From Sphaerodactylus townsendi (lineage: Eukaryota), in NCBI RefSeq assembly GCF_021028975.2, contig NC_059440.1:24428001-24492000 (forward strand): 64,000 nt of DNA. Direction: 5' to 3'. Below, one piece after another: positions 5,280 to 33,760 of this stretch (position 1 is its first letter; each line of letters starts with the position of its first letter). The notes under the pieces are model-generated. The model saw only the letters and a program-made list of their open reading frames with translations. It was not told the DNA's origin and ran no database searches. The translations under genes and the position numbers were made by a program.

Positions 5280-5930
5280 CGACGGGGCTCCCACAGACGA
5301 CTTTGGCAGCGCTCGACTCCCAGTTTGCAGAAATCCTGAGTTAGCCCACCCTGCTCCCCAGCAAAAGACGGCGGGGGTGGGTGGGGGAAGGCAGTTAAGC
5401 CGGCGCCCCTCCCTCCTCCCGCTCCAGAGCCAGCCTAGCAGCGTGGGAGGGAGCGGGCCGGCGCGGTGCCCGGGCAGGGGCGGCCCCTGGCATCGCGGTG
5501 CCCGGTCGGAGAGGCCAGCTGGCTGCCTGTCGCCTGCCTCGCTCGCTCGGTTGTCCGTCCGTCCCGTCGGATCCTGTCGGTGCCGTCGGTCGCGGGGGGG
5601 TCCCGATGGCCAGCGCGGGCTTGCAGCTGGTGGGCTACTTCCTGGCGCTAGCCGGCTGGGTGGCCACCATCTGCGCCTCGGCCCTGCCTCAGTGGAAGCA
5701 GAGCTCGTACGCCGGGGACGCCATCATCACGGCCGTGGGGCTGTACGAGGGTCTCTGGATGAGTTGCGCTTCGCAGAGCACTGGCCAGGTCCAGTGCAAG
5801 CTGCACGAGTCCCTGCTGTCGCTCGACGGTGCGTCCGCCGCGGGGGTGGAAGGGGCCGGGGCGGGAGGGAGGCCGAACGGGGAGCTGGGTTGGTGGGGGG
5901 CGCCTCTTGCCCGGGGGGGGGGGGGGGGAA
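5280..5930 (+). promoter_or_regulatory. CpG island / promoter of CLDN19
   Basis: Sharp rise in GC and CpG content spanning the upstream region and exon 1. Confidence 0.7.
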
Positions 5931-8900
5931 GTTGCAGCAAAAGAATGGGGAGTATGGACTGCCAGCCAGGACCCATTGGGTTGGAGTTGCACTCGCCTCC
6001 TCCTGCATGAGTTGGCCAGTTTTAACAGGGTCTTTTGACAGCATCCCAAATGGGATCAGGGGTCTCCAGTGGGGTTAAGAGGGGTGGGCTGTAAGGTGGA
6101 GGAACAGGGTTTGATTCCTCACTCATCCACATGAGCTGCAGAGACATATCTGGTGGACCGGATTTGTTTCCGCACTCCTACATTCCTGCTGGGTGACCTT
6201 GGGCCAGTCACAGTTCTCTCTGAACTCTCTCAAGCCCCACCTGCCTCACAAGGTGTCTGCTGTGGGGAGAGGGAGTTTGTCAGCCACTGAGTTTCCTTGC
6301 AGGAGAGAAAAGCAGGGTATAACAAAGTCGTGATGGGGCAGTGGGGGGGAGGGGCGGGGGAGGGCAGAGGGCTTGCTTGCCTGCCAAACTATTCACCTGA
6401 GGCGTGATAAAATTGGCATCATTCATCACTGACATGTCTTTTTAGAAAGATAGATTAAAATGCTTCTCTGAAATTAGCAAGGGAGTGTGTGTGTGGGAGG
6501 TGTGCGTGCATGCGTGTGTGTGTGTTTGACAAACTGAAATTAACCTGAGTGGGGAGAAGTACTCTACCGGTGCTGTTGAAGTTCTGGGATTGGAAATCCT
6601 GGGTTTTTTTTTTTTTTTAACCTTTGCATCAACAGCAAGGGGGAAGACCAAATCTAGGCCCCTTCCGCACATGCAGAATGATGCCCTTGCAATCCACTTC
6701 CAATGCACTTTGCAGCTGGATTTTACTGTGCGGAATAGCCAGATCCACTTGCAAACAATTGGGAAAGTGGATTGAAAGTGCATTATTCTGCATGTGCGGA
6801 AGGGGCCTTAGAGCAGCAGCATGATGCTGGTCGTGGAAGGGTTAATCTGACCTGTGCTGCCCCCTCTCTCTGTTGTTTTTAGCCCAGCAGAGAAAACAAG
6901 ACAGGTGTCTGCAACCCTTCCCCCCTTGAGGAGCTAAATGCACAAGGAGAGCAATTTTAATCAGGAAAACTGGGCAGGGGAGTTCCCTCCCTCCCCCATC
7001 TACAAATCCCCCCCCCCATGATCTACAAATCCCCTTATCTGTATCAAGAGTTGCAACCATAGACTCCCACCAGCATAATTTTGGTCCTGCAAAATTAAAG
7101 TCAGCTGAACAGTTGTTTGCCTGCCTCCCCTGGAAGTTGCAAAGACTGGGTTTGTGCTTTGCTTCTTTCCTTCGCTTTGCAGTTCATATGCAGACTTCGA
7201 GAGCTCTAATGGTGGTCTCCATTCTGCTGGGCTTTGTGGGGGTCGTCGTCAGCGTGATTGGAATGAAGTGTACCAAAGTCGGGGACAAGAACCCCGTGAC
7301 CAAAAGCTGGATTGCCGTCTTGGGTGGAGTCTTCTTCCTGCTCGCAGGTAAACCAGAATTCCCTGCACCGTCCTACAGTGTGTGTGTTGTGACCGCTAGA
7401 ATGCTGACTTAAAGACAAGGAAAACCTGGCTTCAAAATCCTAGCGACGTGCATGGCTTTGGGCTACATTTTCTCAAGATGTCCTACCTTGCAGGGTTGTC
7501 ATAAAATGAGGAGGGAAGGGTTTGTGGGGGTAAGATGAGAAAATAATTAGACAGGTGTGAGCTTGTGTAACTGAGGCATGTTGGTTTTTCAACCGAACCC
7601 CTGAAAATGCTGTTAATTATAAAACCAGGTCAAGTTGTCCACCGATCTGAACATTAGCATAGAGAATCTACACAGAGAAGAGTGTAATCAGGTCATAATT
7701 CAGTAATTTGAAGGACAAATGTTGTCTTGAACACGGACATTCACTTGTCTGTGGCTCACCTAAAATTTATCTTGAATTTCTTAACTCCTCCCAACCGCAG
7801 TTTGCTTTACATCTAAAATTCCCAGAGATTTTGCTGTGCAATAGGTTTGATGAAAATTCAGCACATGTTCATGAAACATTCAGGCGCCAAGCTTCCATTA
7901 AAAAAGTGAATGGAAGTACGAGCAAGTTGCGCACCAATGGATAGTCAATGAAATAGGTCTTTACCATGAGATGCTTGAAAAGGTAAAGGTTGTCCCCTAC
8001 TCAAGCACCAGGGTCATTGTTGACCCATAGAATGACGTGACATCATGTCTACCCAAAGAAAAATTAGCTACTGCCTGCCAGCTGAAAACATCCTCATAGT
8101 CAGCAGTACAGCTAGTATGGCCCCTTCCACACACGCAGAATAATGCACATTCAATCCACTTTCACAGTTGTTTGAAAGTGGATTTTGCTATTCCGCATAG
8201 TAAAATCCAGCTTCAAAGTGCATTGGAAGTGGATTGAAAGTGAATTATTCTGCATGCGCAGAAGGGGCCTATAGTTGTCGGAAACCCTGAGGAGGAGGGA
8301 GGGATACAAAAAAAAAGGAAAAGGAGGGAATTTTTTCCCTGCTTACATATTTATTTTGATAGTGATCATTTCTCCCTTTCTTGACCAATCGTAAAATAAT
8401 GCAATTATGCCATTTTTTTTTAAAAAAGGGACTTCAAAAATAGTCCATAGCGTAACAAAAAATCAACATATTTGACATGGAAGGAGTTTTATATTTTTTT
8501 GCTTTTTATGGTATACCGGAGTGCTGTTGTGCTTCTGTGGAAAAGCAGAAAACAAGTTAATAAAATGTTTTGCCGTTCACTGCCTTCAAACAGAAGGGCT
8601 CTTGGAACGCGCAGATCTTTTCAAAGAACAAAGAAATCCTTTTTAAAAAACCTTCAATTTAAGAGAAGAGTTAAAGGCACTTATTACCTCAATTATGCGC
8701 CCCCACCCCCACCCAAAAAAGAACTTGCACATGAAAAATTCCACTGTAATTCTGTATCCTGTGAGGGCAATGTTGAGGTTATGTAGTCCAACATTGTCAT
8801 TACAGTAGTATTACAAAATAATAGTCATTAAACAAATGGAAAAAGATGAAGGAACAGACGTGCAGCAAAATAAAAACATACCTGTTTTCAAGCCCCCTTC

Positions 8901-11900
8901 CTTCTATTTACTTACTCCTGCCAGAGCTGTTAGTTCAGCACATTATACGTAAATGTCAGCAAACCCCAAGAAACAGGGTCACTAGTTTCAAGGTGTGGCC
9001 TAGAAAGGCAACTTCAGTTCCCTAGAGGAAATATCAGCTTCCAAAGAAGGGGAGGGGGATACAGCATCACCACAACACTGAGATCCCTTCCCTCCCTGAA
9101 TATTGTCCTTCCCACCACCAGAATTTCCCAAGCCCAACTTGGCGACTTACCCAGAAAGGAAGAGGCAATTCATTACACTACAAGTCACAAAATGGTCATT
9201 AAAGACATCACATCTTGGCAGTTGCTAAAACCATGTCCAACCACTTAACTTTTTCAGCTCAGCCTAAAGAAATGTGTTTTCAAGATGGCAGCTGCCATGG
9301 CCTGATTGCCGCTTGCTCAGAGGCTTAGTAAGGGCAGTAGGCCCAGCAGTGTTCTGTGGCTGATGTTTCACATTGCCATACCCCTTGCTGCTTAACGATT
9401 TATTGGCTGATGAAGAGGAAGGACAGATTGGTAAGCATAGGAAAGTAGCAGCCACTGCCTTTTTGGCACAGTGGGTCCTGAGCAGGAGCAATCTATCTGA
9501 GCAGTGGGGATTTTAGCAGCACTGAAAGCTGACAAGCCATCTGGGCCAATGCTAGAGTGTGTATGGAGACTATAACTTACGTTGATATCGCTTGAAAGCC
9601 AGCGTGGTGTAGTGGTTAAAAGCAGGTGCACTCTAATCTGGAGAACTGGGTTTGATCCCCCGGTTTGCCACTTGAGCTGTGGAGGCTTATCTGGTGAACC
9701 AGATTAGTTTGTGCATTCCAACACATGCCAGCACATGACCTTGGGCTAGTCACAGTTCTTTGGAGCTCTCTCAGCCTCACCCACCTCACAGGGTGTTTTT
9801 TGTGTGGTGGGTGGGGGGAAGGAAAAGGAGATTGTAAGTCCCTTTGAGTCTCCTTGCAGGAGAGAAAGGGGGGATATAAATCCAACTCTTCTTCTTCTTT
9901 TGGTGCTGAGATCAGAAAAGCTACACAGTGCCGTTCTAATTACAGTTGTAGCTTTCTAAAACCCAAATTACCCCTTAGGATTCGTAATGTGTAGTGTCTT
10001 GATAGCCCATCCCCCCCATACACACAGCTTTGTCTGAAATAGTCCAAGATCAGATGCAAGAGAATGCATTTCCCAAATGCACATACTCTGTACCACTGAG
10101 GCCCCTTCCGCACACGCAGAACAATGCACTTTCAATCCACTTACAGCGCACTTTGCAGCTGTGAGGAATAGCAACCTCCACTTGCAAACAATTGTGGAAG
10201 TGGACTGAAAGTGCATTATTCGGCATGTGCGGAAGGGGCCTGAGCCACTCCACCCCTTCAGCACCCTGCCTGCTTAAGCTATCAGGATCTAGGTAGCTAC
10301 TGTTAAATAGCTGCACAGGCCGGTTGAAAAATTGGCCATCTTGACTTTTTGAAGTCGAGCAACCATAACTGTGTTCTCTAAGGGGAAAAAATTTAGATAC
10401 TTTGAGTCTTCCTCTGTGTTCCCAGGTTTGTGCACAATGACGGCTGTTTCATGGTACGCGACACGAGTGACGGTCGAATTCTTTAATCCGAGCACGCCAG
10501 TTAATGCCAGGTGAATAAATGTCATGTCTAACCATTGCCAAAGGGAGGGCAGCGTGTTGGCCTTCTACAGGCCCAGTTTGGAATGGGGAATATGCAGAGT
10601 CAGTGTAGCCCTGACGACAGCAAATTCCTGCATTTAGACATGGGTGTTCCACAGTGATGTAGGAAAGAAATGCAAGAGATTGCAGTATAAGACACGAGCC
10701 GACGTCTGAATGCCCTGGGACAAAAACACGCTAATAGTTATTTACTCCACAAATCAACAACAAAGCTGAAAATCTAAAGAAATTACAAAAATGTGGCCAG
10801 AAGATAAATAGCAAAATATGAACAGTAAGAAAATATATACAATAACAAGAAAATATTTGCAGTACAACAACAACAGCCTTTGTTGGCACTGAACGTTAAA
10901 AGTTACAGACTTTGAGTCACGTATCCTCATAGCAATTGAGAGAAACTTGGCTACCCCCACTGTTGATATAATTTATTCAGTCGGTTGTAATGGGTGGTAA
11001 TTTATTACGGTATATTAATATGTTGTAATGTGTGACAATATATTGTTATTCCTGTAGATGTTTGTGTCTGTTTCTGTTTAATCTCCCATGGAGTAAATAA
11101 GAATTTGTGCATTATCACTGTTGGAAGCCATGAAGGAGCTAGAAAAAATTCCTAAGCGTAAGGATGTGTCGCTGGCAAAAAAGATCAAGTTAATTCCTGC
11201 CACGATGTTTATCCCTGTTTCTGTGTTTGGGTGTGAAACTGGACAACGCTGACAGGAAGAAAGTAGATTCCTCTGAAATGAAGTGTTGGAAGAGAGTGTG
11301 ACAGAGGCCCCTTCTGCACATGCAGAATAACACATTTTCAATCCGCTTTCAGTGCACTTTGCAGCTGTGCGGAAGAGCAAAATCCATTTGCAAACAGTTG
11401 TGAAAGTGGATTGAAAGTGCATTATTCTGCATGTGCAGAAGGGGTCAGATACCATGCAATGCCAAAAAATCAAATAAGTGGGGTCTAGATAAAATTAAGC
11501 CTGAACTCTCCCTAGAAGCTAAAAATGATTAAACAGGATTGTTGTGAATCAAAAGAGGAAGGCCAAAAATGTGATTGGTCCTTTGTCAAGAGATGCCCTC
11601 TGGCATGAGCAACCATTTCTCTACCACCAAACACACGAAGCCGAGACCAGCCACTGATCCAAACAGTCCACTTATATGATTGGCTCAATGATCCCCAAAT
11701 GATAGACGCATTCCAAAGTCTATTATGAAGGGTGTTTTTCCCCCCAGCTGTTCTACCTTTTTAACAGGAGATGCTCTGCGACTGAGCATGGAGTCTCCTG
11801 CATGCCCTCACCTGCTGAGCCATAATCTGGATGACCTTGGGATGCTGCTGTGCATCTTTTTAAGCGCAGCCAGCCAAGGTTACAGCTTGGTTTGCACTCG

Positions 11901-12081
11901 TTCAACCCTCTCTTTTTGCCGCAGGTATGAATTTGGGCCTGCTCTGTTCGTCGGATGGTCGGCGGCCAGTTTGACCCTGCTCGGAGGGTCTTTCTTGTCC
12001 TGTTCGTGCCCCAGACCGGAAGACAGAGGACAACAGTACTATCGACAAGCGCAGCCTTCGACGACTAGAGAGTATGTCTGA
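5606..12081 (+). CDS. CLDN19: Claudin-19 (209 aa)
   Basis: Exons 5606-5828, 7183-7347, 10426-10510, 11925-12081, all GT-AG, 630 nt in frame. Protein [18 protein letters not shown]...[39 protein letters not shown]...[23 protein letters not shown]...REYV matches the CLDN19 signature. ATTAAA at 12657-12662. Confidence 0.95.
6068..6322 (+). mobile_element. tRNA-derived CORE SINE, degenerate
   Basis: Same family, more diverged. Confidence 0.7.
6657..6807. mobile_element. PIF/Harbinger-type MITE (~140-150 bp, long TIRs)
   Basis: TIR GGCCCCTTCCGCACATGCAGAAT; 3-bp flanks CTA/TTA. Confidence 0.85.
8119..8269. mobile_element. PIF/Harbinger-type MITE
   Basis: Same TIRs, TSD TAT. Confidence 0.85.
9598..9900 (+). 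mobile_element. tRNA-derived CORE SINE
   Basis: Full-length copy. Confidence 0.85.
10100..10240. mobile_element. PIF/Harbinger-type MITE
   Basis: Same TIRs, TSD TGA. Confidence 0.85.
11100..11580 (+). mobile_element. Degenerate RTE/BovB-like LINE fragment interrupted by a MITE
   Basis: Decayed coding traces resembling 'CW.R...[20 protein letters not shown]'. Confidence 0.55.
11306..11446. mobile_element. PIF/Harbinger-type MITE
   Basis: Same TIRs, TSD AGA. Confidence 0.85.
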
Positions 12082-16795: not shown

Positions 16796-16801
16796 GGCAA
16801 T

Positions 16802-17502: not shown

Positions 17503-17665
17503 TAAGTTAAACCATAGTTAGCCATTAGTCTAGGGTAGGAGAGAAAGAAGAAAACAGAAATATGGGGAAAAGAACCTGTCTTTGAACTTTCTTTCAGCTT
17601 TTTAAGTGTCAGGTCATTTATGCACATGTGGTCTCCTCCTTCTCTTTGAGCTTACATTCCCGTAT

Positions 17666-18659: not shown

Positions 18660-18955
18660 AAGAAGAAGAGTTTGGATTTATATCCCACCTTTCTCTCCTG
18701 TAGGGAGACTCAAAGGGGCTTACAATCTCCTTTCCCTTCCCCCACAACAAACACCCTGTGAGGGGGGTGGGGCTGAGAGAGCTCCGAAAAACTGCGACTA
18801 CTAGCCCAAGGTTACCCAGCTGCCATGTGTTGGAGTGTACAAACTAATCTGAATTCCCCATATAAGCCTCCACAACTCAAGTGGCAGAGCAGGGAATCAA
18901 ACCCGGTTTTCCAGATTAGAGTGCACCTGCTCTTAACCACTACACCACGCTGACT
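18660..18955 (-). mobile_element. tRNA-derived CORE SINE
   Basis: Full-length copy. Confidence 0.85.
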
Positions 18956-19109
18956 CTCATTAGGGACTCCTAATTTTTTAGAGTCTCATCGGATTCCCTC
19001 AAACTCATAGGCTTGAAACCCCCAGCAAAACTCAAGCTGCACTAGCAAGCTGGATAATTACTGCATAGCAGAAGGTTCAGGTTTGCATCAAGGTAATGGT
19101 GAATAGGGG

Positions 19110-19609
19110 GTTAATTATTTAACGATACCATCTTTGCGACCTAAAATGCCCCACCCAGCAGTGGTATTTGTTACAATGAGGAAAACACACAGGATGACCA
19201 TATTTTCTCAGGGTAAGCATGTTCTGCAGTAGAACAGATCTGAGTCCAGTAGACCCCCAAGAGCAACAATGACCTCAGTTTAATCATTTCAGCTTCTAGG
19301 GAAGAGTCCAAGCTAGATCTGACCCAGGACCCACCCGCTTGTCTTTTTGACAGTCCACAGTATCCATAAAAGTTTCCTCCAACACCGCTGCTATTGAAGA
19401 CCATCGGGGGAGAAGAGCAACCTAGCCAAGCAGACCCCACCCAGGTAAGAACTGGAAAGAAATGACCAGAAATGAGGTCGTCTCCTTGCATGACCACAAC
19501 ATCGGGATTCTTTGGAGGCAGCATTGCAGTTGAACACTGTGATGTCGAGCAGTTCGAGAGTCTCATGCGCATGTTCTGACCTTCCAGAGTTCTCCACAGA
19601 GTTCTCCAC
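19110..19609 (+). promoter_or_regulatory. Putative promoter and non-coding first exon of the CLDN16-like gene
   Basis: HNF1-like GTTAATTATTTAAC at 19110-19123, TATA-like CATAAAA at 19365-19371, strong donor CAG|GTAAGA at 19444/5, and acceptor CCTTCCAG ending 19587, 22 nt before the ATG. Confidence 0.45.
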
Positions 19610-22600
19610 ATGGCTGCGCTGGTGTCACAGATGTCTTTCTGTGTGGCTTTGGTCTCCACCCTCTTCCTGATTTCAGCCACTTGGACCGACTGCTGGATGG
19701 TGAATGTTGATGACACCATAGAGGTGAGCAGAAACGGGAGAGGCCAGTTTTAAAAGACCAACATGAGCCCAAATGCAGTCAGAGAAAAACATGACTCCTT
19801 TGCATCCCTTCCAGACCCTTCAGAGCTGGTAGGTTTGGTTTCTTCCTTTTAGAAGAATAAGAATTTGGATTTATACCCCACCTTTCCCTCCTGTAAGGAG
19901 ACACAAGGTGGCTTGCAAGCTCCTTTCCCTTCCTCTCCCCACAACAGACACCTGGTGAGGCAGGTGGGGCTGAGAGAGTTCTGAGAGAACTGTGACTAGC
20001 CCAAGGTCGCCCAGCAGGAATGTAGGAGCGCAGAAACGCATCTGGTTCACCAGATAAGCCTCTACCACTCAAGAGGAGGAGTGGGGAATCAAACCCGGTT
20101 CTCCAGATTAGAATCCATCTGCTCTTAACCACTACACCACGTTGGCTCTTTTAGGCATTCCTTCTGTTTCTAAGGGATTCACTGTCATATCAATTGTTTG
20201 TAAACCACTGAGGTGGTTTTTTGAGTGGGAAAGTGGGATATAAGTCCTTAAATTAAAAAAGAAACAAATGAAAAGTTATTCTCTGAATCCAATGTTCTTT
20301 GATTTTCAACATTCCTATACAGCAAGATAGGGTCCAGTTTACATCAGAGGGACCTTCCTAGTTTAGGACAGCTCCCTGAGTCTTGGGAGGGAGAGAATCC
20401 CAGAATCCCTCACACTTATTGCAAAGGACTTTGGGAGACTCTATCATTTGGCTCCTGAGTTATCTCCAATTTGGCTAGGCTTTGCACAAGTAAAAGGCTG
20501 ACTGCGGAGGGGTGGAACCAGGGAGGTGTTTGTGCCCCACCATATGACCAGTCCTGGGAATCTCTAGAGCAGGCCATGCAGAGCTCTTCTGCCCTTTCTC
20601 TGTCCCCATGCAGGTCAGCCAGAAGTGCCGAGGGCTTTGGAGGGAGTGCGTCAGCAACTTGAAAGACGGCATCAAGACCTGCGACCTGCACGATTCCATT
20701 TTAGCAGAACATCCCCGTAAGTCTCCATCTACGGATAAGAAGAAGAGTCCTCTTCACCCCTGGTGGCCTCAGACAGTGGTTTTAAACTCTGAGCAATTGC
20801 GTCTCCCTGGCGCTCATTTTATCCAGCAGTGGTTTGCTCTCTTCCCCCCAGTCAAGATCGTGGTGACGCGGGCCTTGCTGATCACGGCAGACATCCTCTC
20901 GGGCTTCGCTTTGGCTCTGCTGGTGCTGGGCCTCGACTGCATCAAGTTCCTGAAGGACGAGCCACAAGTCAAGCTGAAGATGTGCTATTCGTCCGGATTG
21001 GTGCTGGGGGTCGGAAGTAAGCGTTTGGGGGAGCTTGTGCCGCTAATAACAAGCCAGATTTCTTCAGGGGAATTACACTGGATGGTTTGAGGCATAGCTC
21101 ACTGGCAGAGGCATACCAGGGGAAAATGGTGCCCTGAGCAACACCTGCTCGGGGCGCCCCCCATGCCCCCTCCGGTCCCATTTACCTAAGCTGCTGCTGG
21201 CGGTCCCAGGCAGCCTGGCAGGGCCAGGCCTGGCGGGGCTAGACTGAGAGGTGCCTGGTGGGCCGCTCCTTGGCTCCATCCTACCAGGCTGCTCTTTCAG
21301 CCGGCAGAGCCTCTGACAGCTTTAGGAGCAGCCTGGCAGGGCCGAGTCAAGGGGCAGCAGGTCAGTTGATCCCCCATGTCAGTCTGACAGTTACGCCCAG
21401 TGGTGGGATCCAAAAATTTTAGTAACAGGTTCCCATGGTGGTGGGATTCAAACTGTGGCGTAGCGCCAATGGGGCTGGGCGGGGCACAACGGGGGCATGG
21501 CCGGGCATTCTGTGGGCGGGGCATTCCTGGGCGGGGCGGGGCAAGGATGCAGCCACTGCACCGGTCCTTGGGCGCGAAACGAATGCACGCAGGCGCAGGC
21601 TGCCACGCATGCTGGTGCACTTCCTGCTAGACTGCTTCAAGTTCTGCGCGCTACTGCTGAGAGGAGGGGCGTAACTAAGGCGAAAATCACGTGGGAAAAT
21701 CACCAATTAGTAACCCCCTCTCGGCACACACAAATAATTAGTAACCTACTCTCGGGAACCTGTGAGAACCTGCTGGATCCCACCTCTGGATACGCCCCTA
21801 CTCACTGGACCTCTTTGCCTGCCAGGTGTCCTCGGACTAGTGGGCTCGGTGTGGTACGCCATTGACGTCTACCTAGAGAGGATCAGGCTGGCGTTACACA
21901 ATGTATTTTTGGGTGTCCATTACGATTTTGGCTGGTCCTGCTGGTTGGGAATGGCAGGATCCACAGGCGGCCTTCTGACTTCCATCGTGTTGACCTGCTG
22001 CCTTTATTCCCTCACAGGTTAGTATTTATTTCACTTGCGACTCAGGTGCCCTCTAGATCAGGACCCCTGCCCACAGTGTAATCAATGCTTTGTATATTTC
22101 GCCCTCCAAAATAATAATCAGAAAAGAGCTGACAAAATTAGCAGGCAAGACGGAATGGAGCGTGCTCAGAAAATGGCAGCGAGGAGGAAGACCAGAGATG
22201 CAGAGAGGGAAACGTCTTAAAGAGATCACACAGCAAATCAAAACGTTTTCAAAACGTTCCAGCAAAAGAATTGCTATTCTCGAGAATGCGTTCAAAACAT
22301 TTTCAGGCTGGAAAGAAAACATGTTTTGGGGAAAAAACTATGTGGAATCCCTCGGAGAAAATGTTTTTATTTCCTGCCTCAAAATGTTTTAAAGTGTTTG
22401 TGTGGAAAGGGCAAAAGGGTTCTAGTCCAAGACAAGGCTGTCAGGGATGCGAGTCCCAGGCAGAGAAGAACTTTAAAGGACCAGAGTTTTGAATGCTCAA
22501 TATTCTAATTCTTCCATCACAGCTGATGCCACTTCCTCCCGGAGACCTCACCGATTCACGTTCTGTTCGCGGGCGGCCACCTGCAAGATGTATGCCGTCG

Positions 22601-22614
22601 CTTCTCGAGTGTGA
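19610..22614 (+). CDS. Claudin-16-like protein (CLDN16 paralogue, 221 aa)
   Basis: Exons 19610-19723, 20614-20716, 20852-21016, 21826-22017, 22523-22614 (114/103/165/192/92 nt), all GT-AG and in frame. Motifs [68 protein letters not shown] and C-terminal KMYAVASRV are diagnostic of the CLDN16 (paracellin-1) family. Confidence 0.92.
19852..20147 (-). mobile_element. tRNA-derived CORE SINE
   Basis: Full-length copy of the second subfamily (CACTCCTACATTCCTGCTGGG variant). Confidence 0.85.
21398..21788 (+). mobile_element. Non-autonomous hAT element (~390 bp)
   Basis: TIRs CAGTGGTGGGATCCA / TGGATCCCACCTCTG; 8-bp TSD GTTACGCC/GATACGCC. Confidence 0.88.
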
Positions 22615-22911
22615 CACGGCTGAAGGATACCCCCGTGTCAGCTGTTGATATGGGATCGTTAATTGTACGGATCTTTTCTTTCAGCTAAGGAGAGAAGGCT
22701 GGCTTTTGAGGTCACCTGCACCATGTGCCCCCCTACCCAGCAGCCCCAAGGGACAACACTGCTATCAGCATAGCAAGCCAGACATTGTTAGTGTCTTTAT
22801 CAAGCAATGGGTGGTTAAGGTGAATTCACTGAATCATAAAAGACACGATGCAATTGGGCTTCGTCTGGTTTAATAGATATCCGGACTCATTTCTGGCAGA
22901 GAAACCCGCTT

Positions 22912-25900
22912 TCACAGGTACGTGCCTTTGGAAACAGGAGGGGGAAACCGAGGGCTCTGATCCTTTCTTAGACTCTGGGCGTCGAGAGAGCTGGCAGCGA
23001 TCAGCAAAATCCCAGCAGCGCAGGCACAAGCAGCACCACCTGCAGCCATCCAGTAGGCACAGCCGAGTTCATAAGTCACACCTGGAATTCCTAAAGTCAC
23101 CTGGAAGAAAACTGAAGCAGTGAGCAAGCTGGGGCAGGGTGTCCATCAATCGACCGATCACATTGGTAGCCCACCTTCCCTTCAAGGAGCTCAGGGCCGC
23201 AAACATGATTCTGTCCTGGCAACTGGCCTTTACAACAACCCTGTGAGGTAGGCTAGGTTAAAAACCAGCATCCGGCCTAAAGTCATTCAATGATCTTTAC
23301 GGCAAGGTGGAGATTTGAACCTGAGGCCATCTAATTTCAGTCCAACGCTCTAGTCATGATACCATACCGGCTGTTGGAGTTAGAGCAGTGATGGCGAACC
23401 TTTTCGAGACCAAGTGCCCAAATTGCAACCCAAAACCCACTTATTTATCGCAAAGTGCCAACACGGCAATTTAACCTGAATACTGAGGTTTTAGTTTAGA
23501 AAAAATGGTTGACTCAGAGGCGTGCGTTACTCGGGAGTAAGCTTGGTGGTAGTCGGTGGCTTGGCTTTGAAGCAACCATGCAACTCTCCCAACGGATGAA
23601 TCAAGACCCTAGGAGGGTTTGCTCAGAAGCCAGCCCCATTGCCAGCAACCGAGCTTACTCCCAGGTAAAGGATCGCGCTTTAGTTCTTTGCATGAAAATC
23701 AGTGGGGTTTAACAGCGTTTAGCAGGGTTACCTACACTGCTTCCCCAAAATGAGGTCTTAGGTTTAATGCTAATAATCAAGCCCAGTGGCCCAGGCCAGC
23801 CTGGATGTGTGTGGGGTGGGGGGGACTCTGTTTTCGCGTGCCCACAGGGAGGGCTCTGAGTGCCACCTCTGGCACCTGTGCCATAGGTTCGCCACCACTG
23901 GGTTAGAGTGTCAGACCCAGGTTCGAATCCTCACTTTGTCATGGAAGCTTGCTTGGCTACTCTTGGCTGGTTATTTCCTCTCCACCTAACATACCTCACG
24001 GGGTTTCTGTGGCAGAGAGAATGCTTTAAACAGTTTAGGATTTCTGTCGGAGAGAATATCTAAATCGACAGCCAGTGCAAGGTTAAACCTTGGGATGGGC
24101 TTGGAAAATCCCTCACGAGCCCAAACATGGTGAATTTTTGTCAGACAACAATGCGGACGGCTAATAGGAATTTGCCTCAAACAAATAATTCTCTCCCGGG
24201 GGGGAAATCTGCTGTTTTCTCATAATATTAAACCACAATGAGCTTTAGTCTGTGGCTTTAGACCATACGTTCATATACATATATATATGCATTCATTCCT
24301 TTCATGGCTCAGTTTTTTAATGCTAGCGATTGTTCTGGGAAACAACACAGACAAACAGTCGATTGTGAGGAGACGCACATTAATATTAAAGCGGGGGGAG
24401 GGGGAGTTGCATACCCTTCAAAAAAACATAGAAAAATATGTTTCCTTGTACAGTTGGTAATACTGCATTGTCGTTCAATTTCATCATCTAATTCAGGCGT
24501 GTCCAACTCTGGTGCTTTTTCAGTGGAGAAATAATGCCCCCACCCAGTGGTGAGTTTCAAATAATGTAGCAACTGGTTGTTTACAAGCACCATTTTAACA
24601 ACCGGTTCTGCCGAAGTGGTACGAACCTGCTGGATCCTACCACTGCCTCCACCCCCGTTATGATGAAGATGCTATTGAGAGAAGAGCTCCAAAAGGGTCA
24701 GGTTTTTTAAAATGGCAATCCTGCAGTGTTTCACCTCCAAATCTCCAGGAGTTTTCCAACATGGATCTGGTAACCGACACTCTGGCCCATTCCCTATGGG
24801 GGACCTGGTAACCCTAGCTCAGCCACAACCCGTTCCCTTAAAACAGCTGAATAGGGTCTCCCTCATCTGACACTTTAACATCCACTATATCGTAGAGATT
24901 GTACTGTATATTTCCTGTACCTTAGTGCCCCTGTTCTAACCTTCCTAACTGCCTCCAGGAACCGAATTTACCTCTAATTTATACTTCTGCACGGTGTCGA
25001 TACCATACCAAAGGACAGCGATTGCACCAGCTAGACCTAGGGAAGAGAGAAAAATATTGCGTGTTGACTGCAAACTTTATCTCCCCCGATCCTGTGCCTT
25101 TAACAACAAGTAATAATACATCAACTTAGTAGGAGAAGCATTTCTTGGCCAGAAAAGGCAACAGGATTTGACCCACATTATTGTACACTCCACTTCTCCC
25201 CATTCACTCTTCACCGCACAGTATTCATTTGCTCAGCAGCGATCCAACGTATGGTAGTTATTCTTTCCAACTTATCCACCATGGTGGCTGATTTCCTACC
25301 TCCACATCCTACTGGAGCAAGGATGGGAGAATGGAGGTATTTCCAGGTAAAAACCGGAAAGTGATATCACCCTCACTCTAATATTTTGCTTTTACCATAG
25401 AGATTAGCAAAATCCTAGAGTATCAGTTACATCACTTCCAGGTTTTAGCCAGATGTGATGTCGGTGCTGATGCATCAACAACATATTTTTCCCCCATGTC
25501 CCACCCTCCAAAGTCTCCCAGGGATTCCAAGAAGAGGGAATCTGAGGGGGTGGAGACATAGGGGAGGGCCATCAGTGGGATGGCATGACATCACTTCCTG
25601 TGATCTTTTGTCTGCATTTTTCTCCCACAGGCCACCACTCAACAATAGGGAAAGCCATTAGGATCTCTCCTGGTCTCGCAGTTTGTGGCTTGGCTCTTCA
25701 GCCTGAGCCACTTGGCTGTTCAGTCATGAGCAAGCTACTTGACGACTGCTTTTCCCATGTAAGGAGAGAATATCAGCCTGCAGGTGGGACCTGTGGATGC
25801 CTCAGAATTACAGACTACAGAGATTTGTTCCCCTGGAGAAACTGGATGCTTTGGAGGGTAGACTCTGGTCCCTTCCGCACATGCAGAATAATGCACTTTC

Positions 25901-28900
25901 AATCCACTTCCACAATTGTTTGCAAGTGGATTTTGCTATTCCACACAGCTGCAAAGTGCGTTGAAAGTGGACTGAAAGTGCATTATTCTGCATGTGCGGA
26001 AGGGGCCTCTGTGGCATTGTACCTCACTGAGATCCCTTGCCCTCCCCCGTTTCACCTGAAAATCCCCTGCTGAAATCCCCTGCTCTCCCTGCTGAAATTC
26101 TGTGCGTAACTTGTTGCCAAAGGCACAGAAAGAGACCCAGTCAAAAAGGTGGCATTTGTTAGAAACGTGTTCGTGTTTGAGATCTTCCCAGAGCCGCAGC
26201 CCAGACAGAATAAGTTTGACTCACTCCCGCAAGAAGACTAAAGCCTCACTTACCTCCCAGGAGGAACAATGTCCCAGCTGCCAGGGAGAACTTGTATTTC
26301 CACAGGACTTTGTCACGAATCAGTTTGGTGCATTTCATCCCAGCAATGAAAAGGGGCATGGCGGCAAGCGTCAGGAAGCCAGTAAGGATGACCAAGACCC
26401 GGGTGGCCACAAAGACAGCTGCAAATAGAGGGGGGGAGTGATCATGGCATCTGAGGAAAGAAAATACCACCAGGGGCCGAGCAGCCAGAACTCTGCACTA
26501 GTGATCATTTTTGCCCACCTTGTTTGCAATTTTCTTTACGCAAACTTTTGCAATACAAATACTAACTCTTTTCCCCAATGGCATAAAAACAGGGTGTTTT
26601 TTTAAAAGACACACGTTGTACCTGCCACTATTTACCATCTTATATTATTCATAAGCAAACAATAAGATATATCGACAACAGTGCAATCTCAAGTACAACA
26701 ATCTTAACACATCAAAGTACTCTACAACGTATATACACTCAAGACGTCCTGTCATATATTGCAGAATTCGCCAGGGTTGCCAACCTACAGCTGGTGTCTG
26801 GAGATCTGCCAGAATTACAGCCGGTTGCCTGACAATGGAGATCAGTTTCCCCAGATGAAATGGGAGCTAGAGTTAACAGTGAATGCTAAGGCTCAACACA
26901 ACCTATAGATGTAGCATGGTAACCTGCGGGAGATATAGTATGTTGACCTGCTGGTGGCCTAAGCAGAGACTTAGGTTAATACACAGCGTGGTGGTTAATA
27001 CACAGCGTGGTGTAGTGGTTAAGAGCAGGTGCACTCTAATCAGGAGAACTGGGTTTGATTCTCTGCTTCGCCACTTGAGCTGTGGAGGCTTATCTGGTGA
27101 ACCAGATTAGCTTGTGCACTCCAACACATGCCAGTTGAGTCACCTTGGGCTAGTCACAGGTCTTTGGAGTTCTCTCAGCCCCACCCACTTCACAGGCTGT
27201 TTGTTGTGGGAGGGGGGAAGGGAAAGGAGACTGTAAGCCCCTTTGAGTCTCTTTACAGGAGAGAAAGGGGGATATAAATCCAAACTCTTCTTCTACTACT
27301 ACTTGGATGACAGAACACCAAGGAATTCCAGGGTTACTATGCAGAGGCAGGTGACTTCTGAAGCCTCTTAGCCTACGGAGTCACCATGATTGGCTGTAAC
27401 TTGACAGCACTTGCCGCCACCACCAGTCAGACAGTGTAAGATTGTTTTGAATAGTGGACCAGGTTTTGAGTGCAGAAGATCCTGTATCCATTCCTCAGTT
27501 TAAAAGATCTCGGATAACAGATCTGGGAATGGCCCCTCCCCGAAGTTCCTGGCATAAATAAATACCATGAACCTGGCTTCCTGGTTGTGTCTGGTCAACA
27601 AAGTGTTGTCGTTCGTTTGCTGTATTTCAAAGTCTGCTTCTGAAATTCCAATATGACCTGGAGATTCCATCCGAGATATGGATAAGGTTTCCCACCCACC
27701 CAAATAACTCGGACTCATTTTCCTTACCGGGGTGTTCGCTGAGATAGGAGATAGGAATATCACAAGTCCAGAGGTCAGCCACGTTATCAAATATGCACTC
27801 ACTCCACAGACCCCGGCATCGGACGCTCAAGCCCACAGAAGATAAAGGATCCTTGGCGTCTTGCTGTACAAGGGAAATTTTTGGATAATGCAAATATAGG
27901 AAAAAATAGTGAAATGGAAAAAAAGTAAATTAAATGAAGAAATATCTAAATACATTTTGTAGAACCAGGTCTGGATGGTTCTACAAAATCCCCCCACCCC
28001 CAGAATTATTTTTAAAGCTTTATAATTTGCAACATTTCCATTTGCAAAATTTCTAATTTTGTTGGCCAGGAAGGGGAGGGGGGATTTCACCTGTCACTTT
28101 TTAATCAGCAAAGTTCTATATTTATAACCCTCCCCAAAAAAGTTGATATTTTGCAAATGCTACTCCCAAAATGTGCCAAGCCATAGCCCCTTTAAGGATA
28201 TTTTAAAATGCTTCTGTGATCCCGAAATCTCCCTAGCGCTACAGTGATTAAGCACAGCTTTGGGACCCTGCGAGATACCTTAAGGGCATTGTTATTTCTC
28301 TGAGGAAACTGCAAGGGATAAGCAGAATGAAGCTTCCAAACCAACATTAAATAGTTAACTAAACTTGGCATCATGCTAAACCTAAGAATTAATTTTAAAA
28401 CATTAAAAACACATAGATCTTTGAGCTTGGCAAGAGGGTTCTAGAAGTTTCTATCAGTCATGAGGCGAGTTTCCATTAACTTATTGGATGCCCATCTTTG
28501 AAATATGGTGAACCTCCTTGTGAGGAAGGCTGAGGACAGTGTAAAAAATAGAGAGAGGGGAGTGTGTATGTGTGTGTGTGTGTGTGTGTGAAACACCCAC
28601 AGAATAAAGTGAATTGTTCCTCTCTTTTTGACCTTTCCAGGAGCACAGCAGATGCCACTGGCATTTATTGCCACCAATATATTTCTCAGGGCTTAGTGTT
28701 CCCATGACGATGGCATCATTTTCTCTTTTTTAAGCAGCTCGGCCAAAGTATTTCTTTGGTTCCAGCGTGAATGGAATTACCATCTATATCTTCTCAGGGA
28801 GAAAGGGGAAGGGACAATATTAGTTTGAAGACCAAAGTCTAGGGCCCCTTCCGCCCATGCAGAATAATGCATTTTCAATCCACTTTCACAACTATTTGCA

Positions 28901-30004
28901 AGTAGATTTTGCTGTCCCGCACTGTAAAATCCAGCTGCAAAGTGCATGGAAAATGGATTGAAAGTGCATTATTCTGCATGGGGCCTAGGTTAAGACGTCT
29001 GGGGAAAATGCCTCGTCCTGTTGCAGCTGACTTGGTGGGGGGGTCTCTTATGGGAAATCCTAATTCAGGCTCAAAGCAAAATTGTGTGACGCTGAGATGC
29101 ACCTGCATTTGTTCAGCTTCTGAATTTTTCAGTATTGCCTTTCTATCCTATCTCATTACTTTGATGCCCCCTTTGTATGGACGATTTACACCAATTGCGC
29201 AAGATGATCAAGTTGCCCCCTAGGATCTGTCCATCGGTCTTCCCTCATGCTGTGTATCCCCAACCTGTTTCCTTTGTTACGAAAGGGTTCACATTTTGAG
29301 AATAGTTACCTTTTAAGAATAACTGGAAGATAGGAGTAATTGATGCGTGCACCATTATTGAGTGTACCAGCGTTACATTGTGTTATAGCTGTGATCGTCA
29401 GTTGCACAAGCTAAAATGAACTTTTTGAACAGTACGGTGAATGGTTAGGCAGAGAGACTGGGACCCCCCCCCCCCCCACACACACACACACAAGCTCCCC
29501 CACTGTGGTCATTTGGGATGCCTGCCACCAAATCCAACCCAATTCATTCATTCATTCATTGAATTTCTATACTGCCCCTCCCCTGATGGGCTCGGGGCAG
29601 TAAACTTCATGATACTTCACGATATAAAACCAAATATCTAAAACTATATCAGTTTTTTTGATTGTCAAGATATGAGCTTTGATGGTGCTCGGATTCTGAA
29701 AGACACAGTGCAACGGTTAGAGCGTCGAACTAGAGCAGGGGAGACCTGAGTTCAAATCTCCCTTCAGCCATGAGTGACTTGGGATCATTTACTCCCTCAA
29801 GGGACAGCCCAGCCTGCAAGGCAGTTGTCAGAGACCCATTTACACCCCCATAAGCAGGTGGGATGCAATGTATTTGACAGAGAGAAAGTTAATTCCTACC
29901 CGCCAGCAATCTGATTCGGCACACAGGATGAGAAGCAGAAGGCCCGAGACCCCCAACGCCATCGCCAACATATCCGCAGCCAATGCAGGTGCTGTGATTT
30001 TCAT
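22912..30004 (-). CDS. Divergent claudin family protein (CLDN16-related ECL1, 219 aa)
   Basis: Minus-strand exons 30004-29900, 27863-27728, 26418-26254, 25036-24972, 23100-22912 (105/136/165/65/189 nt), all GT-AG and in frame. Protein MKITAPALAADMLAMALGVSGLLLLILCAESDCWRQDAKDPLSSVGLSVRCRGLWSECIFDNVADLWTCDIPISYLSEHPAVFVATRVLVILTGFLTLAAMPLFIAGMKCTKLIRDKVLWKYKFSLAAGTLFLLGGLAGAIAVLWYGIDTVQKYKLEVTLGIPGVTYELGCAYWMAAGG...SKGTYL has four hydrophobic segments and the W-GLW-C-C claudin signature. Confidence 0.9.
23386..23900. mobile_element. Non-autonomous hAT (Charlie-like) element
   Basis: TIRs CAGTGATGGCGAACCT / AGGTTCGCCACCACTG; TSD AGTTAGAG/GGTTAGAG. Confidence 0.88.
24545..24645 (+). mobile_element. 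Short hAT MITE related to 21398-21788
   Basis: CAGTGGTG...GAACCTGCTGGATCCTACCACTG; TSD CCCCCACC/CCTCCACC. Confidence 0.7.
25867..26007. mobile_element. PIF/Harbinger-type MITE
   Basis: Same TIRs, TSD TCT. Confidence 0.85.
26983..27302 (+). mobile_element. tRNA-derived CORE SINE
   Basis: Full-length copy with a short duplication at the 5' junction. Confidence 0.85.
28843..28985. mobile_element. PIF/Harbinger-type MITE
   Basis: Same TIRs, TSD TAG. Confidence 0.85.
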
Positions 30005-32367: not shown

Positions 32368-33760
32368 GTAAAAACCTGCTTCCGAGGGAATCGTTGCTGA
32401 TTGCTTGGCAAAACACCTGCCCGGCAGCATCCTGGGTACCAGGCCCTCTGGGCAGGGATGCAGTAAAGGAAGGGATACTTTAGAAAAAGCGCTGGAAAGG
32501 GGGTGGGGAGGATGTTAGAGTAGGGAAGAGAGAAAATGTAAGTGCATCTCTGTGTGCACATGTTGTGGAGTTTCTGCTTCCCCAAGAGAGTGACCATGAC
32601 GGGGGATTTCTGCAAGTGACCCTTGTGGTCTCTTCCAACTATGATTCTATGATTCTGTTAGGGCCAAATCCTCAAGGGGTTCATCACATTCCCAGCCCTG
32701 TTTCCTAGATTTTCTGGTGTTAAAAACCAAAATAAGGTGCTAGCAATAAAAGCACCGGCAATTTTTTTGGGGGGGAGGGCGGTCTTATTTGTGAAAATAT
32801 TTGCACCTTTCAAAATAATTCTGGTGATAATCAGACTGACAAAGATAACATCACTCAAACATAATAAAATATATGTGCAAAGTGTACTTCGTTACTCTGT
32901 AAGGTATAGACCAGGTCTCTGCCTTTCACTGTTTCTAACAATGAGTGCGAAAGTGCTGGAATGATTGACAAGCACCTGGAACTTTTAAAAACATTATTTA
33001 TTTAGTTATTTAGTTATTTTGGATTTGTATCCTGCCCGATCCCTGAAAGGCTGTGGGGGGTTACAACACAAGTCAAACAATGCATAGATATTAAAATATA
33101 AATCCTCATTTAAATTAACTTTAAAAATGATTAAGATGTGTTATTAAATATAGCACACATTTCAGAGTTAGATTTGTGCTGTTTCATTTTGACTCAGAAT
33201 CTCCTGTATTCTTCAGGTCTCACTTATCAAACTGCACAGAGAACACTATGCACACTTATTGTTCCTCGTGGTTGGTTGTTTCTTGTGAGTGGGGGGCATT
33301 AAAAATATAACATGCACACCCACACACACAGGCTGAGGTCCAGATAAAACTGTGCCACTTATTCGTCTGATTATATCAAAGGGTCCTTAAAGGCCATTTG
33401 ACACATATAACAGGTTGGAATGCGATGGCAGATTCATGAGTTCATACAATGGCTTTAGCACTAATTTTTAGTTTCCCTGTTTGTTTGTTTTAAAAAATCC
33501 CCAATTGCAAGTAGAAAACAAGTTTGCAGGTGAAATGCTTTCCTAGAACCTTTATTCTTGATACAGTAGTTTTCTCCTTGCAGGGAGTTCTCTATCAAAA
33601 GTCAATCCCATTGCCACCTACAGTATAAAAAAAGGTACAGCTGTTTTTGCTATCCTCACCTGCCTGTATAGATGGAATCTTAAGTCCTCCTTGTGTCCCA
33701 GCGGCATTAGAAACCACATCAGTTCTAAGCAATGTTTTGTTCCTTGTAGGAAAACCCACA

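What the first reader, a model, noticed from the sequence alone, without database searches (positions are those of the whole stretch)
22912..30004. Unnamed mosaic claudin: CLDN16-type ECL1, classic-claudin intracellular loop and its own intron pattern
Seen: ECL1 has the CLDN16-like extra cysteines (SDCW...RCRGLW.EC...TCD...LSEHP), yet the loop after TM2 is GMKCTK as in CLDN19 rather than the GLDCIKF of its neighbour. Intron 1 falls right after CWR and a phase-0 intron splits ECL2 (KYKLE|VTLG); neither position is shared with the two adjacent claudins. ECL1 is also longer (QDAKDPLSSVGLS). Exons 1 and 4 are invisible in the supplied ORF track. Inference: an ancient, separate claudin subtype bridging classic claudins and CLDN16, likely labelled only generically in databases.
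Basis: partly seen in the sequence, partly recalled or inferred. Interest (0 to 1): 0.8.

Follow-up and report, generated by a model that had tools for sequence, protein, structure and literature searches.

The report
Unstudied claudin-16-like gene in a gecko
This is an intact five-exon tight-junction (claudin) gene from an old, unstudied sister family of claudin-16 that fishes, amphibians and non-avian reptiles keep, that did not turn up in birds or mammals, and that databases call only "claudin-16-like".

Summary
On the minus strand, 30004..22912, five exons with canonical splice sites encode a 219-aa claudin. The same span is annotated as a 219-aa product in the Sphaerodactylus townsendi assembly. 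A UniRef "Uncharacterized protein" of 208 aa (P0032) is the same spliced product read from the second ATG.

It is not the orthologue of any named human claudin. It belongs to a conserved family, here "type A", with the signature CWRQDAKD..SSVGLS.RCRGLWSEC and the C-terminus TYL. Type A was found in squamates, turtles, crocodilians, amphibians, bichir, sturgeon, bowfin and a few teleosts. It was not found in birds, mammals or sharks.

Trees separate four CLDN16-type groups:
- Type A.
- Type B, a second "claudin-16-like" group.
- C1, true CLDN16, which includes the mammals.
- C2, a 221-aa paralogue absent from mammals; this is the window's neighbour beside CLDN19.

The intron pattern is not unique to this gene. 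Type B shares it, and it is unchanged in sturgeon. The AlphaFold model has a claudin fold.

Function is inferred: probably a moderately cation-permeable tight-junction subunit anchored through a PDZ-binding tail. No RNA data were available. This is a new member of a known kind, of moderate interest.

The parts
29900..30004 (-). Exon 1 (105 nt): start codon, TM1, ends ...SDCWR. The following intron is phase 0.
   Evidence: 91% identical to Euleptes P0025 residues 1-35. In one search, P0032 residues 7-24 match 29953..29900 exactly; P0032 starts at the second ATG, which the sequence places at 29971. One search gives the annotated 219-aa CDS starting here.
27728..27863 (-). Exon 2 (136 nt): ECL1, QDAKDPLSSVGLSVRCRGLWSECIFDNVADLWTCDIPISYLSEHP. 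The following intron is phase 1.
   Evidence: exhaustive HMMER, best hit 89% identical, E 1.5e-21; 98% identical to P0025.
26254..26418 (-). Exon 3 (165 nt, phase 1 at both ends): TM2, intracellular loop GMKCTK, TM3. This is the 165-nt exon also found in the window's CLDN19 and CLDN16-type genes.
   Evidence: weak PF00822 match; best PDB match claudin-19.
24972..25036 (-). Exon 4 (65 nt): end of TM3 and first half of ECL2, ends KYKLE. The following intron is phase 0.
   Evidence: 100% identical to P0025; same position and phase in sterlet type A and in gecko type B.
22912..23100 (-). Exon 5 (189 nt including the stop): second half of ECL2 (VTLGIPGVTYELGCAYW), TM4, cytoplasmic tail ending in the PDZ-type motif TYL.
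   Evidence: TYL is kept in at least 90% of 31 type A proteins.
22869..22874 (-). ATTAAA hexamer 37 nt after the stop codon; a candidate poly(A) signal. Inferred only.
19610..22614 (+). Context: the neighbouring 221-aa CLDN16-type gene (C2 paralogue, P0082), convergent with this gene. The two stop codons are 297 bp apart.
5606..12081 (+). Context: four-exon CLDN19 gene (exon lengths 223, 165 and 85 nt, then the last exon).

Best explanation
Shown:
- This is an intact protein-coding gene of the gecko Sphaerodactylus townsendi (CM037629.2, about 24.45 Mb). It encodes a 219-aa four-helix claudin.
- It belongs to a distinct, conserved CLDN16-type paralogue family, here 'type A'. Databases label it only 'claudin-16-like'.
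- Type A and a sister family, type B, share a five-exon structure. Its introns are phase 0 right after CW[R/Q], phase 1 after ECL1, phase 1 after TM3, and phase 0 in ECL2.
- That structure differs from the CLDN16 pair: C1, the true CLDN16 kept in mammals, and C2, the window's neighbour.
- Type A lies tail to tail with C2 in gecko, frog and sturgeon. It was found only in bony vertebrates other than birds and mammals.

Inferred mechanism:
- Like other claudins, it inserts into tight-junction strands of an epithelium.
- Its ECL1 carries the canonical disulphide pair and a second invariant cysteine pair. It has a conserved Asp directly after the last cysteine and a net charge of about -3. It would line the paracellular cleft and most likely give a moderately cation-permeable pathway. 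It may act as a subunit together with CLDN19 and/or the C2 claudin encoded next to it.
- The conserved C-terminal T-Y-L would bind PDZ domains of ZO scaffold proteins.
For: Gene model:
- Canonical splice sites and an open frame.
- The annotated 219-aa product covers the same span.
- P0032 is identical across all junctions.

Conservation:
- The exhaustive search with exon 2 gave 21 hits. The top ones are 73-89% identical and come from tegu, newt, frog, bowfin and alligator.
- There are 46 word-search hits and 120 listed profile hits, and all type A members are called 'claudin-16-like' or something equally generic.
- The window's protein departs from the 90% type A consensus at a single residue.

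Separate family:
- Trees give type A 93, type B 100 and C 90 SH-aLRT.
- A second tree gives C 100, C1 97, C2 96 and type B 99.
- Holding type A together, or types A and B together, gives better likelihoods than the free tree. p-AU is 0.68 and 0.65.

Shared intron positions and phases in sterlet type A and gecko type B and in Xenopus type A.

Synteny: the convergent A/C2 pair is present in sterlet and Xenopus.

Fold:
- AlphaFold gives pLDDT 83.5 and pTM 0.80, with four helices and a five-strand sheet.
- The best PDB matches are claudin-15, -4, -3, -19 and -9, TM 0.7-0.8.

ECL1:
- D21, C22, C40, C47, C58 and D59 (P0032 numbering) are invariant in 69 sequences.
- Mean ECL1 net charge is -3.0 for type A, +1.6 for type B, -5.3 for C2 and -7.7 for C1.

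From my own knowledge: an acidic residue right after the second ECL1 cysteine marks the cation-pore claudins 2, 10b and 15; CLDN16 needs CLDN19 to reach the junction.
Against: - No expression evidence. All six runs that hold the stretch are genomic contigs, and none is on record as RNA.
- Tissue, junctional localisation, ion selectivity and partners are untested.
- ECL1 is the least confident part of the model (pLDDT 57-73), and no coordinates were available to measure the distance between the cysteines.
- The net charge of -3 is much weaker than that of CLDN16, so a sealing or modulatory role is not excluded.
- This gecko has Cys where at least 90% of type A proteins have Tyr in ECL2 (ELG-C-AYW).
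- The branching order of types A, B and C rests on one long, partial outgroup (a CLDN19 fragment), and most of the deep forks are poorly supported.
Confidence: 0.8

Rival explanations
1. Same gene and family, but it works as a sealing or inhibitory subunit rather than a cation pore. It would tighten the junction or damp a CLDN16-type/CLDN19 channel, as CLDN14 is reported to do in mammals.
For: The ECL1 net charge of about -3 is far from the -5 to -8 of C2 and C1. The intracellular loop GMKC and the exon-3 similarity are closest to classic, mostly barrier-type claudins. The role of CLDN14 is from my own knowledge.
Against: The Asp directly after the last ECL1 cysteine and several acidic ECL1 residues are conserved in at least 90% of type A proteins. 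No functional data exist either way.
Confidence: 0.25
2. Type A is not a pre-vertebrate or pre-2R lineage. It is a fast-evolving inverted tandem copy of the adjacent C2 gene, made in the bony-vertebrate stem, and its apparent depth in the tree is a long-branch effect.
For: Types A and C2 are immediate convergent neighbours in gecko, frog and sturgeon. Types A and B were found only in bony vertebrates, while C includes lamprey and sharks. The stems of A, B and C are long, at 1.0-3.2 changes per site.
Against: C1 plus C2 form a clade that excludes types A and B, with support 100. Types A and B differ from the window's C2 gene at three intron features: intron 1 is shifted by 8 codons, there is an ECL2 intron, and there is no intron after TM4. 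From my own recollection only, C1 has the same five-exon structure as C2; I did not check this. Several intron changes would then be needed after the duplication.
Confidence: 0.3
3. The locus is a decaying or silent copy in this gecko, that is, a pseudogene or an annotation artefact.
For: There is no RNA evidence. One otherwise conserved Tyr is replaced by Cys.
Against: The frame is open and all eight splice sites are canonical. The five exons are 82-100% identical to the 219-aa Euleptes orthologue. The listed contigs of two related organisms show no indels inside exons 2-5; exon 1 was outside the stretch laid, and some differences were not listed. The start codon, C-terminal motif and length are conserved in geckos.
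Confidence: 0.03
4. It is simply the gecko orthologue of human CLDN16 or of another named human claudin.
For: Some records name type A members 'claudin-16', for example Anolis carolinensis P0033 and Varanus P0036.
Against: Squamates have a separate C1 gene that groups with mammalian CLDN16, for example Eublepharis P0207 and Anolis P0206. This gecko also has C2 right beside type A. No mammalian protein appears among the type A hits of the exhaustive exon-2 search or of the profile search.
Confidence: 0.02

Closest known systems
Claudin-16 (paracellin-1, CLDN16): the C1 clade and its non-mammalian paralogue C2
   Same: - Claudin fold.
- Four invariant ECL1 cysteines (DCW ... CRGLW.EC ... TCD) and the ...EHP end of ECL1.
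- WY.[IV]D at the start of ECL2.
- A phase-0 intron between CW and CRGLW that classic claudins lack.
- The shared 165-nt exon.
- A class-I-like PDZ tail with Thr at position -2.
- Genomic adjacency to C2 and CLDN19.

   Different: - About 26-30% identity overall.
- ECL1 is 3 residues longer and much less acidic, -3 against -5 to -8.
- Intron 1 lies 8 codons nearer to CW.
- It has an ECL2 intron and no intron after TM4.
- The loop is GMKCTK instead of GLDC[IV]KF.
- The tail is TYL instead of [ST]RV.
- It forms a separate clade.
'Claudin-16-like' type B (for example S. townsendi P0075, Eublepharis P0013)
   Same: - Identical intron positions and phases.
- The IPG..[YF]E.G.S.W motif after the ECL2 intron.
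- A TY[LV] C-terminus.
- Similar length, 210-220 aa.
- The same chromosome, and about the same taxon range.
- Types A and B as one clade is not rejected and gives a better likelihood.
   Different: - About 30% identity.
- The ECL1 signature is CWQ[IV]NSKGSV.LS.
- ECL1 net charge is about +1.6.
- It has no GMKC loop.
- It lies 3.67 Mb away in this gecko.
- No type B was found in crocodilians in the lists seen.
Classic claudins (CLDN19 in this window; solved structures of CLDN15, 4, 3, 9 and 19)
   Same: - Fold: TM 0.7-0.8 to the solved structures.
- The GLW..C...C core.
- The G-M-K-C-T-K loop, identical to the window's CLDN19.
- The 165-nt exon with the same phases.
- An intron within ECL2.
- A Tyr at position -1 of the tail.
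   Different: - Two extra ECL1 cysteines and an intron inside ECL1.
- The ECL2 intron is 26 nt upstream and in another phase, 0 against 2.
- Only 20-27% identity to the solved claudins.

Membership tests
Claudin family (PF00822 PMP22_Claudin, claudin fold) | Four transmembrane helices with an extracellular five-strand sheet formed by ECL1 and ECL2 | tested here: met
   AlphaFold model of P0032: helices 2-19, 69-96, 107-148 and 160-194, with five strands. pLDDT 83.5, pTM 0.80. The top Foldseek hits are claudin-15, -4, -3, -19 and -9.
Claudin family (PF00822 PMP22_Claudin, claudin fold) | ECL1 signature W-(n)-GLW-(2)-C-(8-10)-C | tested here: met
   CW ... RGLWSEC-IFDNVADLWT-C is read directly and is invariant in the alignment.
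Claudin family (PF00822 PMP22_Claudin, claudin fold) | Significant match to the Pfam model | tested here: met
   Precomputed PF00822 and PF13903 hits exist for P0032 and its orthologues and for the 219-aa gene call. Single exons give only a weak match (exon 3: E 0.09). The joined model itself was not submitted.
Claudin family (PF00822 PMP22_Claudin, claudin fold) | Localises to tight junctions and forms strands | not testable with these tools
   This needs cell expression with freeze-fracture or immunolocalisation.
CLDN16 proper (orthologues of human claudin-16, clade C1) | Groups with mammalian CLDN16 in a gene tree | tested here: not met
   Mammals fall in C1 (support 97). The finding falls in type A, outside C, which has support 100.
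CLDN16 proper (orthologues of human claudin-16, clade C1) | ECL1 signature CWMVN.DD..E.S.KCRGLW.EC and the tail ...YA.[DA][ST].V | tested here: not met
   The finding has CWRQDAKDPLSSVGLSVRCRGLWSEC and the tail GTYL.
CLDN16 proper (orthologues of human claudin-16, clade C1) | Gene structure: no intron in ECL2 and an intron after TM4 | tested here: not met
   The finding has a phase-0 ECL2 intron and none after TM4. The window's C2 gene shows the CLDN16 pattern. The structure of C1 itself was not examined here.
CLDN16-type group (A + B + C1 + C2) | Four invariant ECL1 cysteines, Asp after the last one, and an intron between CW and CRGLW | tested here: met
   C22, C40, C47, C58 and D59 are invariant in 69 sequences. 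The phase-0 intron lies after CWR.
'Claudin-16-like' type A (unnamed family) | Signature DCWR.DAKD..SSVGLS.RCRGLWSEC, PG.TYELGY..W and the C-terminal TYL | tested here: met
   The window's product matches the 90% consensus of 31 members everywhere except one residue, Cys for Tyr.
'Claudin-16-like' type A (unnamed family) | Five exons with intron phases 0, 1, 1, 0 at conserved positions, and a convergent C2 neighbour | tested here: met
   Gecko. Sterlet. Xenopus. The C2 neighbour is seen.

The most novel reading that the evidence does not exclude
Types A and B, with C2 and CLDN19, are the remains of an ancestral vertebrate set of CLDN16-type paracellular channel subunits. Type A is a still unidentified partner of Cldn19 for paracellular Mg2+/Ca2+ handling in the kidney or another osmoregulatory epithelium of fishes, amphibians and reptiles. 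Its loss, together with B and C2, in mammals (and of A and B in birds) accompanied the reorganisation of divalent-cation reabsorption in the loop-of-Henle nephron.
Probability: 0.2. Interest if true: 0.65.

Novelty: new member of a known kind. Interest (0 to 1): 0.45.

Why it matters
Claudin-16 and claudin-19 form the paracellular Mg2+/Ca2+ pathway of the mammalian kidney, and mutations in either cause hypomagnesaemia with nephrocalcinosis. This work shows that mammals keep only one of four old CLDN16-type genes.

Non-mammalian vertebrates keep more of them. Geckos, frogs and sturgeons still have type A beside C2, and in this gecko CLDN19 lies next to that pair. None of these extra genes appears in the literature I could search. 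"Claudin-16-like" occurs in one paper, as a list entry.

A recent salmonid study states that the partners of Cldn19 in fish kidney are unknown (PMC11605958). The type A, B and C2 genes are concrete, testable candidates. They also offer natural variants of the CLDN16 ECL1, with net charge from -8 to +2 on the same four-cysteine scaffold, for structure-function work.

The result also warns that "claudin-16" labels in reptile, bird and fish annotations cover four different genes.

Tried and rejected
- Exon-by-exon Pfam and PDB sequence searches were nearly blank. Exons 1, 2, 4 and 5 gave no family, and exon 2 matched only leucine-rich-repeat proteins by chance. Single exons are too short for this.
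- RNA evidence was not obtainable. The single run search returned six genomic contig sets and none on record as RNA. Laying them showed only DNA-level variation. The seven exon differences I could score were five replacements and two silent changes, too few for any statement about selection. The many 'joints' in that output fall in repeat-rich intron parts and are not splice junctions.
- Literature searches found no description of this family.
- No type A remnant was found in the 5.8 kb between C2 and the cold-shock-domain gene of ostrich.
- Type B is not in this window.
- I did not run complex prediction, because I do not claim a specific binding pair.
- The joined five-exon model was never sent to a search or fold tool. 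P0032, a database protein identical to the spliced product from Met12, was used instead. One script only indexed codon positions across exons to classify variants.
- I considered and rejected orthology with human CLDN16 and a pseudogene reading.
Full report
**What is in the sequence**

The minus strand between 30004 and 22912 holds five exons with canonical acceptor and donor sites.

| Exon | Coordinates | Length | Content and intron after it |
|---|---|---|---|
| 1 | 30004..29900 | 105 nt | Start codon and TM1, ends ...SDCWR; phase 0 |
| 2 | 27863..27728 | 136 nt | All of ECL1, ends ...LSEHP; phase 1 |
| 3 | 26418..26254 | 165 nt | TM2, loop GMKCTK, TM3; phase 1 |
| 4 | 25036..24972 | 65 nt | Ends ...KYKLE; phase 0 |
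| 5 | 23100..22912 | 189 nt | VTLGIPGVTYELG..., TM4, tail ending GTYL, then the stop |

The sum is 219 codons plus the stop. Exons 1 and 4 sit in ORFs of 54 and 42 aa, which explains why an ORF track with a 60-aa threshold misses them.

**Whose genome, and is the gene annotated**

A database protein named claudin-16 of Sphaerodactylus townsendi (P0082) is identical to the neighbouring gene's exons. A UniRef 'Uncharacterized protein' of the same gecko (P0032, 208 aa) is identical to the five exons of the finding across all four junctions, starting at the second ATG.

Looking up P0082 in the assemblies returned CM037629.2 of GCA_021028975.2. Its gene calls there are:
- a 217-aa claudin (CLDN19);
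- the 221-aa gene;
- a 219-aa minus-strand product with a PF00822 hit, spanning exactly 7093 bp, which equals 22912-30004.

So the model is already in the public annotation, under a generic label.

Exons were searched by reference, and P0032 stood in for the spliced product.

**Relatives**

An exhaustive HMMER search with exon 2 alone found 21 proteins at E up to 0.001. The top seven are 73-89% identical. Those I looked up come from tegu, newt, frog, bowfin and alligator. A teleost (blenny) protein follows at 60%. The names are 'Claudin', 'hypothetical protein', 'claudin-16-like', or for the alligator fragment 'claudin-16'.

A word search with the tegu protein and a profile search added dozens of 'claudin-16-like' proteins. 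They come from squamates, turtles, crocodilians, caecilians, salamanders, frogs, bichir, sturgeon and smelt. No bird, mammal or shark protein carries this signature.

The closest relative is the 219-aa protein of the gecko Euleptes europaea. Its identity to exons 1-5 is 91, 98, 83, 100 and 82%.

Across 31 members the following are kept in at least 90%:
- DCWR.DAKD..SSVGLS.RCRGLWSEC..D..A..WTCD.P.SYL...P
- GM.C
- PG.TYELGY..W
- the terminal TYL

The window's product departs from that consensus once, with Cys for Tyr in ELG-C-AYW.

**Four CLDN16-type groups**

Motifs and trees separate four groups:
- **Type A** is the finding.
- **Type B** has CWQ[IV]NSKGSV.LS.RC[RK]GLW and the tail TYV. It occurs in squamates, turtles, amphibians, sturgeon and paddlefish.
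- **C1** carries the CLDN16 signature CWMVNADDSLEVS.KCRGLW. It is the true CLDN16 and includes the mammals.
- **C2** carries the same signature in a 221-aa protein. It was found in lamprey, chimaera, frogs, eels, osteoglossomorph teleosts, squamates, turtles, crocodilians and birds, but not in mammals.

SH-aLRT supports in the two trees:

| Group | | |
|---|---|---|
| Type A | 93 | not recovered as one clade (see AU test) |
| Type B | 100 | 99 |
| C | 90 | 100 |
| C1 | - | 97 |
| C2 | - | 96 |

The window's neighbour is C2. The gecko Eublepharis and Anolis have their C1 gene on other contigs.

AU tests do not reject type A as one clade, or types A plus B as one clade. Both constrained trees scored better than the quick free search. 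The deep order of A, B and C depends on a single partial outgroup, the CLDN19 part of a fused bird model, so I treat it as unresolved.

**Intron pattern**

The window's CLDN19 has exons of 223, 165 and 85 nt plus a last exon:
- It has no intron inside ECL1.
- Its ECL2 intron is phase 2, in the Arg codon before YEFG.

The window's C2 gene has these introns:
- a phase-0 intron after [11 protein letters not shown];
- the shared phase-1 introns around the 165-nt exon;
- no ECL2 intron;
- an intron after TM4.

However, the pattern is not private to this gene:
- The type B gene of the same gecko lies 3.67 Mb away (L001). It has introns at the same four positions and in the same phases: CWQ|INSKG, HP+1, AG+1 and QYE|VSLRIPG.
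- The type A gene of the sterlet does too (L002), and so does that of Xenopus.

This structure has therefore been stable since before ray-finned and lobe-finned fishes split. It is a shared character of types A and B.

Intron 1 of A and B and intron 1 of C2 are both phase 0 and lie 8 codons apart, between CW and CRGLW, where classic claudins have none. A common origin with later remodelling is plausible but not shown.

**Synteny**

Type A and C2 are convergent neighbours in gecko, where the stop codons are 297 bp apart, and also in sterlet and Xenopus.

In ostrich, CLDN19 and C2 are followed by 5.8 kb and then a cold-shock-domain gene. tblastn finds no type A relic there. From my own knowledge, human CLDN19 lies next to YBX1 without any CLDN16-type gene. 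That fits loss of both C2 and type A in mammals.

**Structure and inferred mechanism**

With a 69-sequence alignment, AlphaFold gives pLDDT 83.5 and pTM 0.80, with four long helices and five extracellular strands. ECL1 is the least confident part. Foldseek ranks claudin-15, -4, -3, -19 and -9 first, TM 0.7-0.8.

All four ECL1 cysteines and the Asp after the last one are invariant in A, B, C1 and C2. This suggests a second disulphide besides the canonical one. I could not measure it.

Mean ECL1 net charge by group:

| Group | Net charge |
|---|---|
| Type A | -3.0 |
| Type B | +1.6 |
| C2 | -5.3 |
| C1 | -7.7 |

In claudins 2, 10b and 15 an acidic residue at that post-cysteine position gives cation selectivity (my own knowledge). 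By that analogy I infer a moderately cation-permeable tight-junction subunit, held to ZO scaffolds by the conserved T-Y-L tail. Its partners could be CLDN19 and/or C2. A sealing or modulatory role is the main rival.

**What is missing**

No RNA runs hold the stretch. The contigs laid are genomic. They show no indels in exons 2-5 among the listed differences in two related organisms, and the variants are too few to measure selection. Tissue, localisation and permeability remain open.

**Literature**

'Claudin-16-like' occurs in one paper, as a transcript label. Searches for paralogue names and for claudin-family evolution found no treatment of these groups. A salmonid study notes that Cldn19's partners in fish kidney are unknown (PMC11605958).

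Two earlier notes of this scan had proposed a three-claudin cluster and that the neighbour is an ohnologue of CLDN16. My trees agree with the second.

**Verdict**

It is a member of an old, unstudied CLDN16-type family, found here only in non-avian, non-mammalian bony vertebrates and labelled only generically. It is a new member of a known kind, of moderate interest.

Noticed in passing
window 19610-22614 (+): The gene annotated 'claudin-16' beside CLDN19 is not the orthologue of mammalian CLDN16. It falls in a second CLDN16 clade, C2: 221 aa, found in lamprey, chimaera, frogs, eels and sauropsids, with no mammals. Squamates have the true CLDN16 (C1) elsewhere. 'Claudin-16' and 'claudin-16-like' labels in public records cover four different genes.
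   Followed up: yes
L001 (S. townsendi CM037629.2, 20.75-20.78 Mb), gene at 10001-19763: There is a second 'claudin-16-like' family, type B (P0075). It lies on the same chromosome 3.67 Mb from the window and has the same intron positions and phases as the finding. Its ECL1 is slightly basic (+1.6) and its tail is TYV.
   Followed up: partly
window 22614-24400: The stop codons of the convergent C2 and type A genes are 297 bp apart. The first plus-strand AATAAA or ATTAAA after the C2 stop is at 24227, beyond the last exon of type A. The two 3' ends may therefore overlap in antisense. This rests on hexamer positions only; there is no transcript data.
   Followed up: partly
window 23059-23061 (-), codon 171 of the 219-aa product: This gecko has Cys (TGT) in ELG-C-AYW, where at least 90% of 31 type A proteins have Tyr. 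It is the only departure from the family consensus and adds a cysteine to ECL2.
   Followed up: partly
window 26383: T>A (Thr93Ser in the type A protein) is seen in a contig of run X1, the same organism as the window, and in both related organisms. Ser is the residue of other geckos, so the window may carry the derived allele.
   Followed up: no
L004 (ostrich CM081606.1), 12130-17964: In ostrich, CLDN19 and C2 are followed by 5.8 kb without any type A relic and then by a cold-shock-domain gene (YBX1-like by my reading). A bird model, 'claudin-19 isoform X2' of 411 aa (P0087), is a read-through fusion of CLDN19 and C2.
   Followed up: partly
window 33629-41402 (+), 48116-48532 (-), 60276-60653 (+): Other genes are present. 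Exons at 33.6-41.4 kb read like an SLC45-type sugar transporter, with only weak Pfam MFS hits. An ORF has a full Ribosomal_S16 domain (MRPS16-like). A coiled-coil exon has a sub-threshold HAP1_N match.
   Followed up: partly
window 3047-3583, 13178-13630, 15032-15340, 54232-54522 (+): Repeated ORF fragments end in ...RRRLRGDMIEVYKIMHGVENVDREKF...FFTQRVIGVWNMLPQEVV. By my reading these are 3' parts of a LINE (CR1-like); Pfam found nothing. Short SINE-like repeats also lie in the introns of the finding, at about 23.3-23.9, 25.8-26.1 and 27.0-27.3 kb, where contig depth is enormous.
   Followed up: no
Hemicordylus capensis proteins P0040, P0041, P0060-P0063: This lizard has many predicted isoforms of the type A gene with alternative N-termini. 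One is named 'claudin-1-like isoform X8' and its first 92 residues are unrelated. These may be alternative first exons or model artefacts.
   Followed up: no
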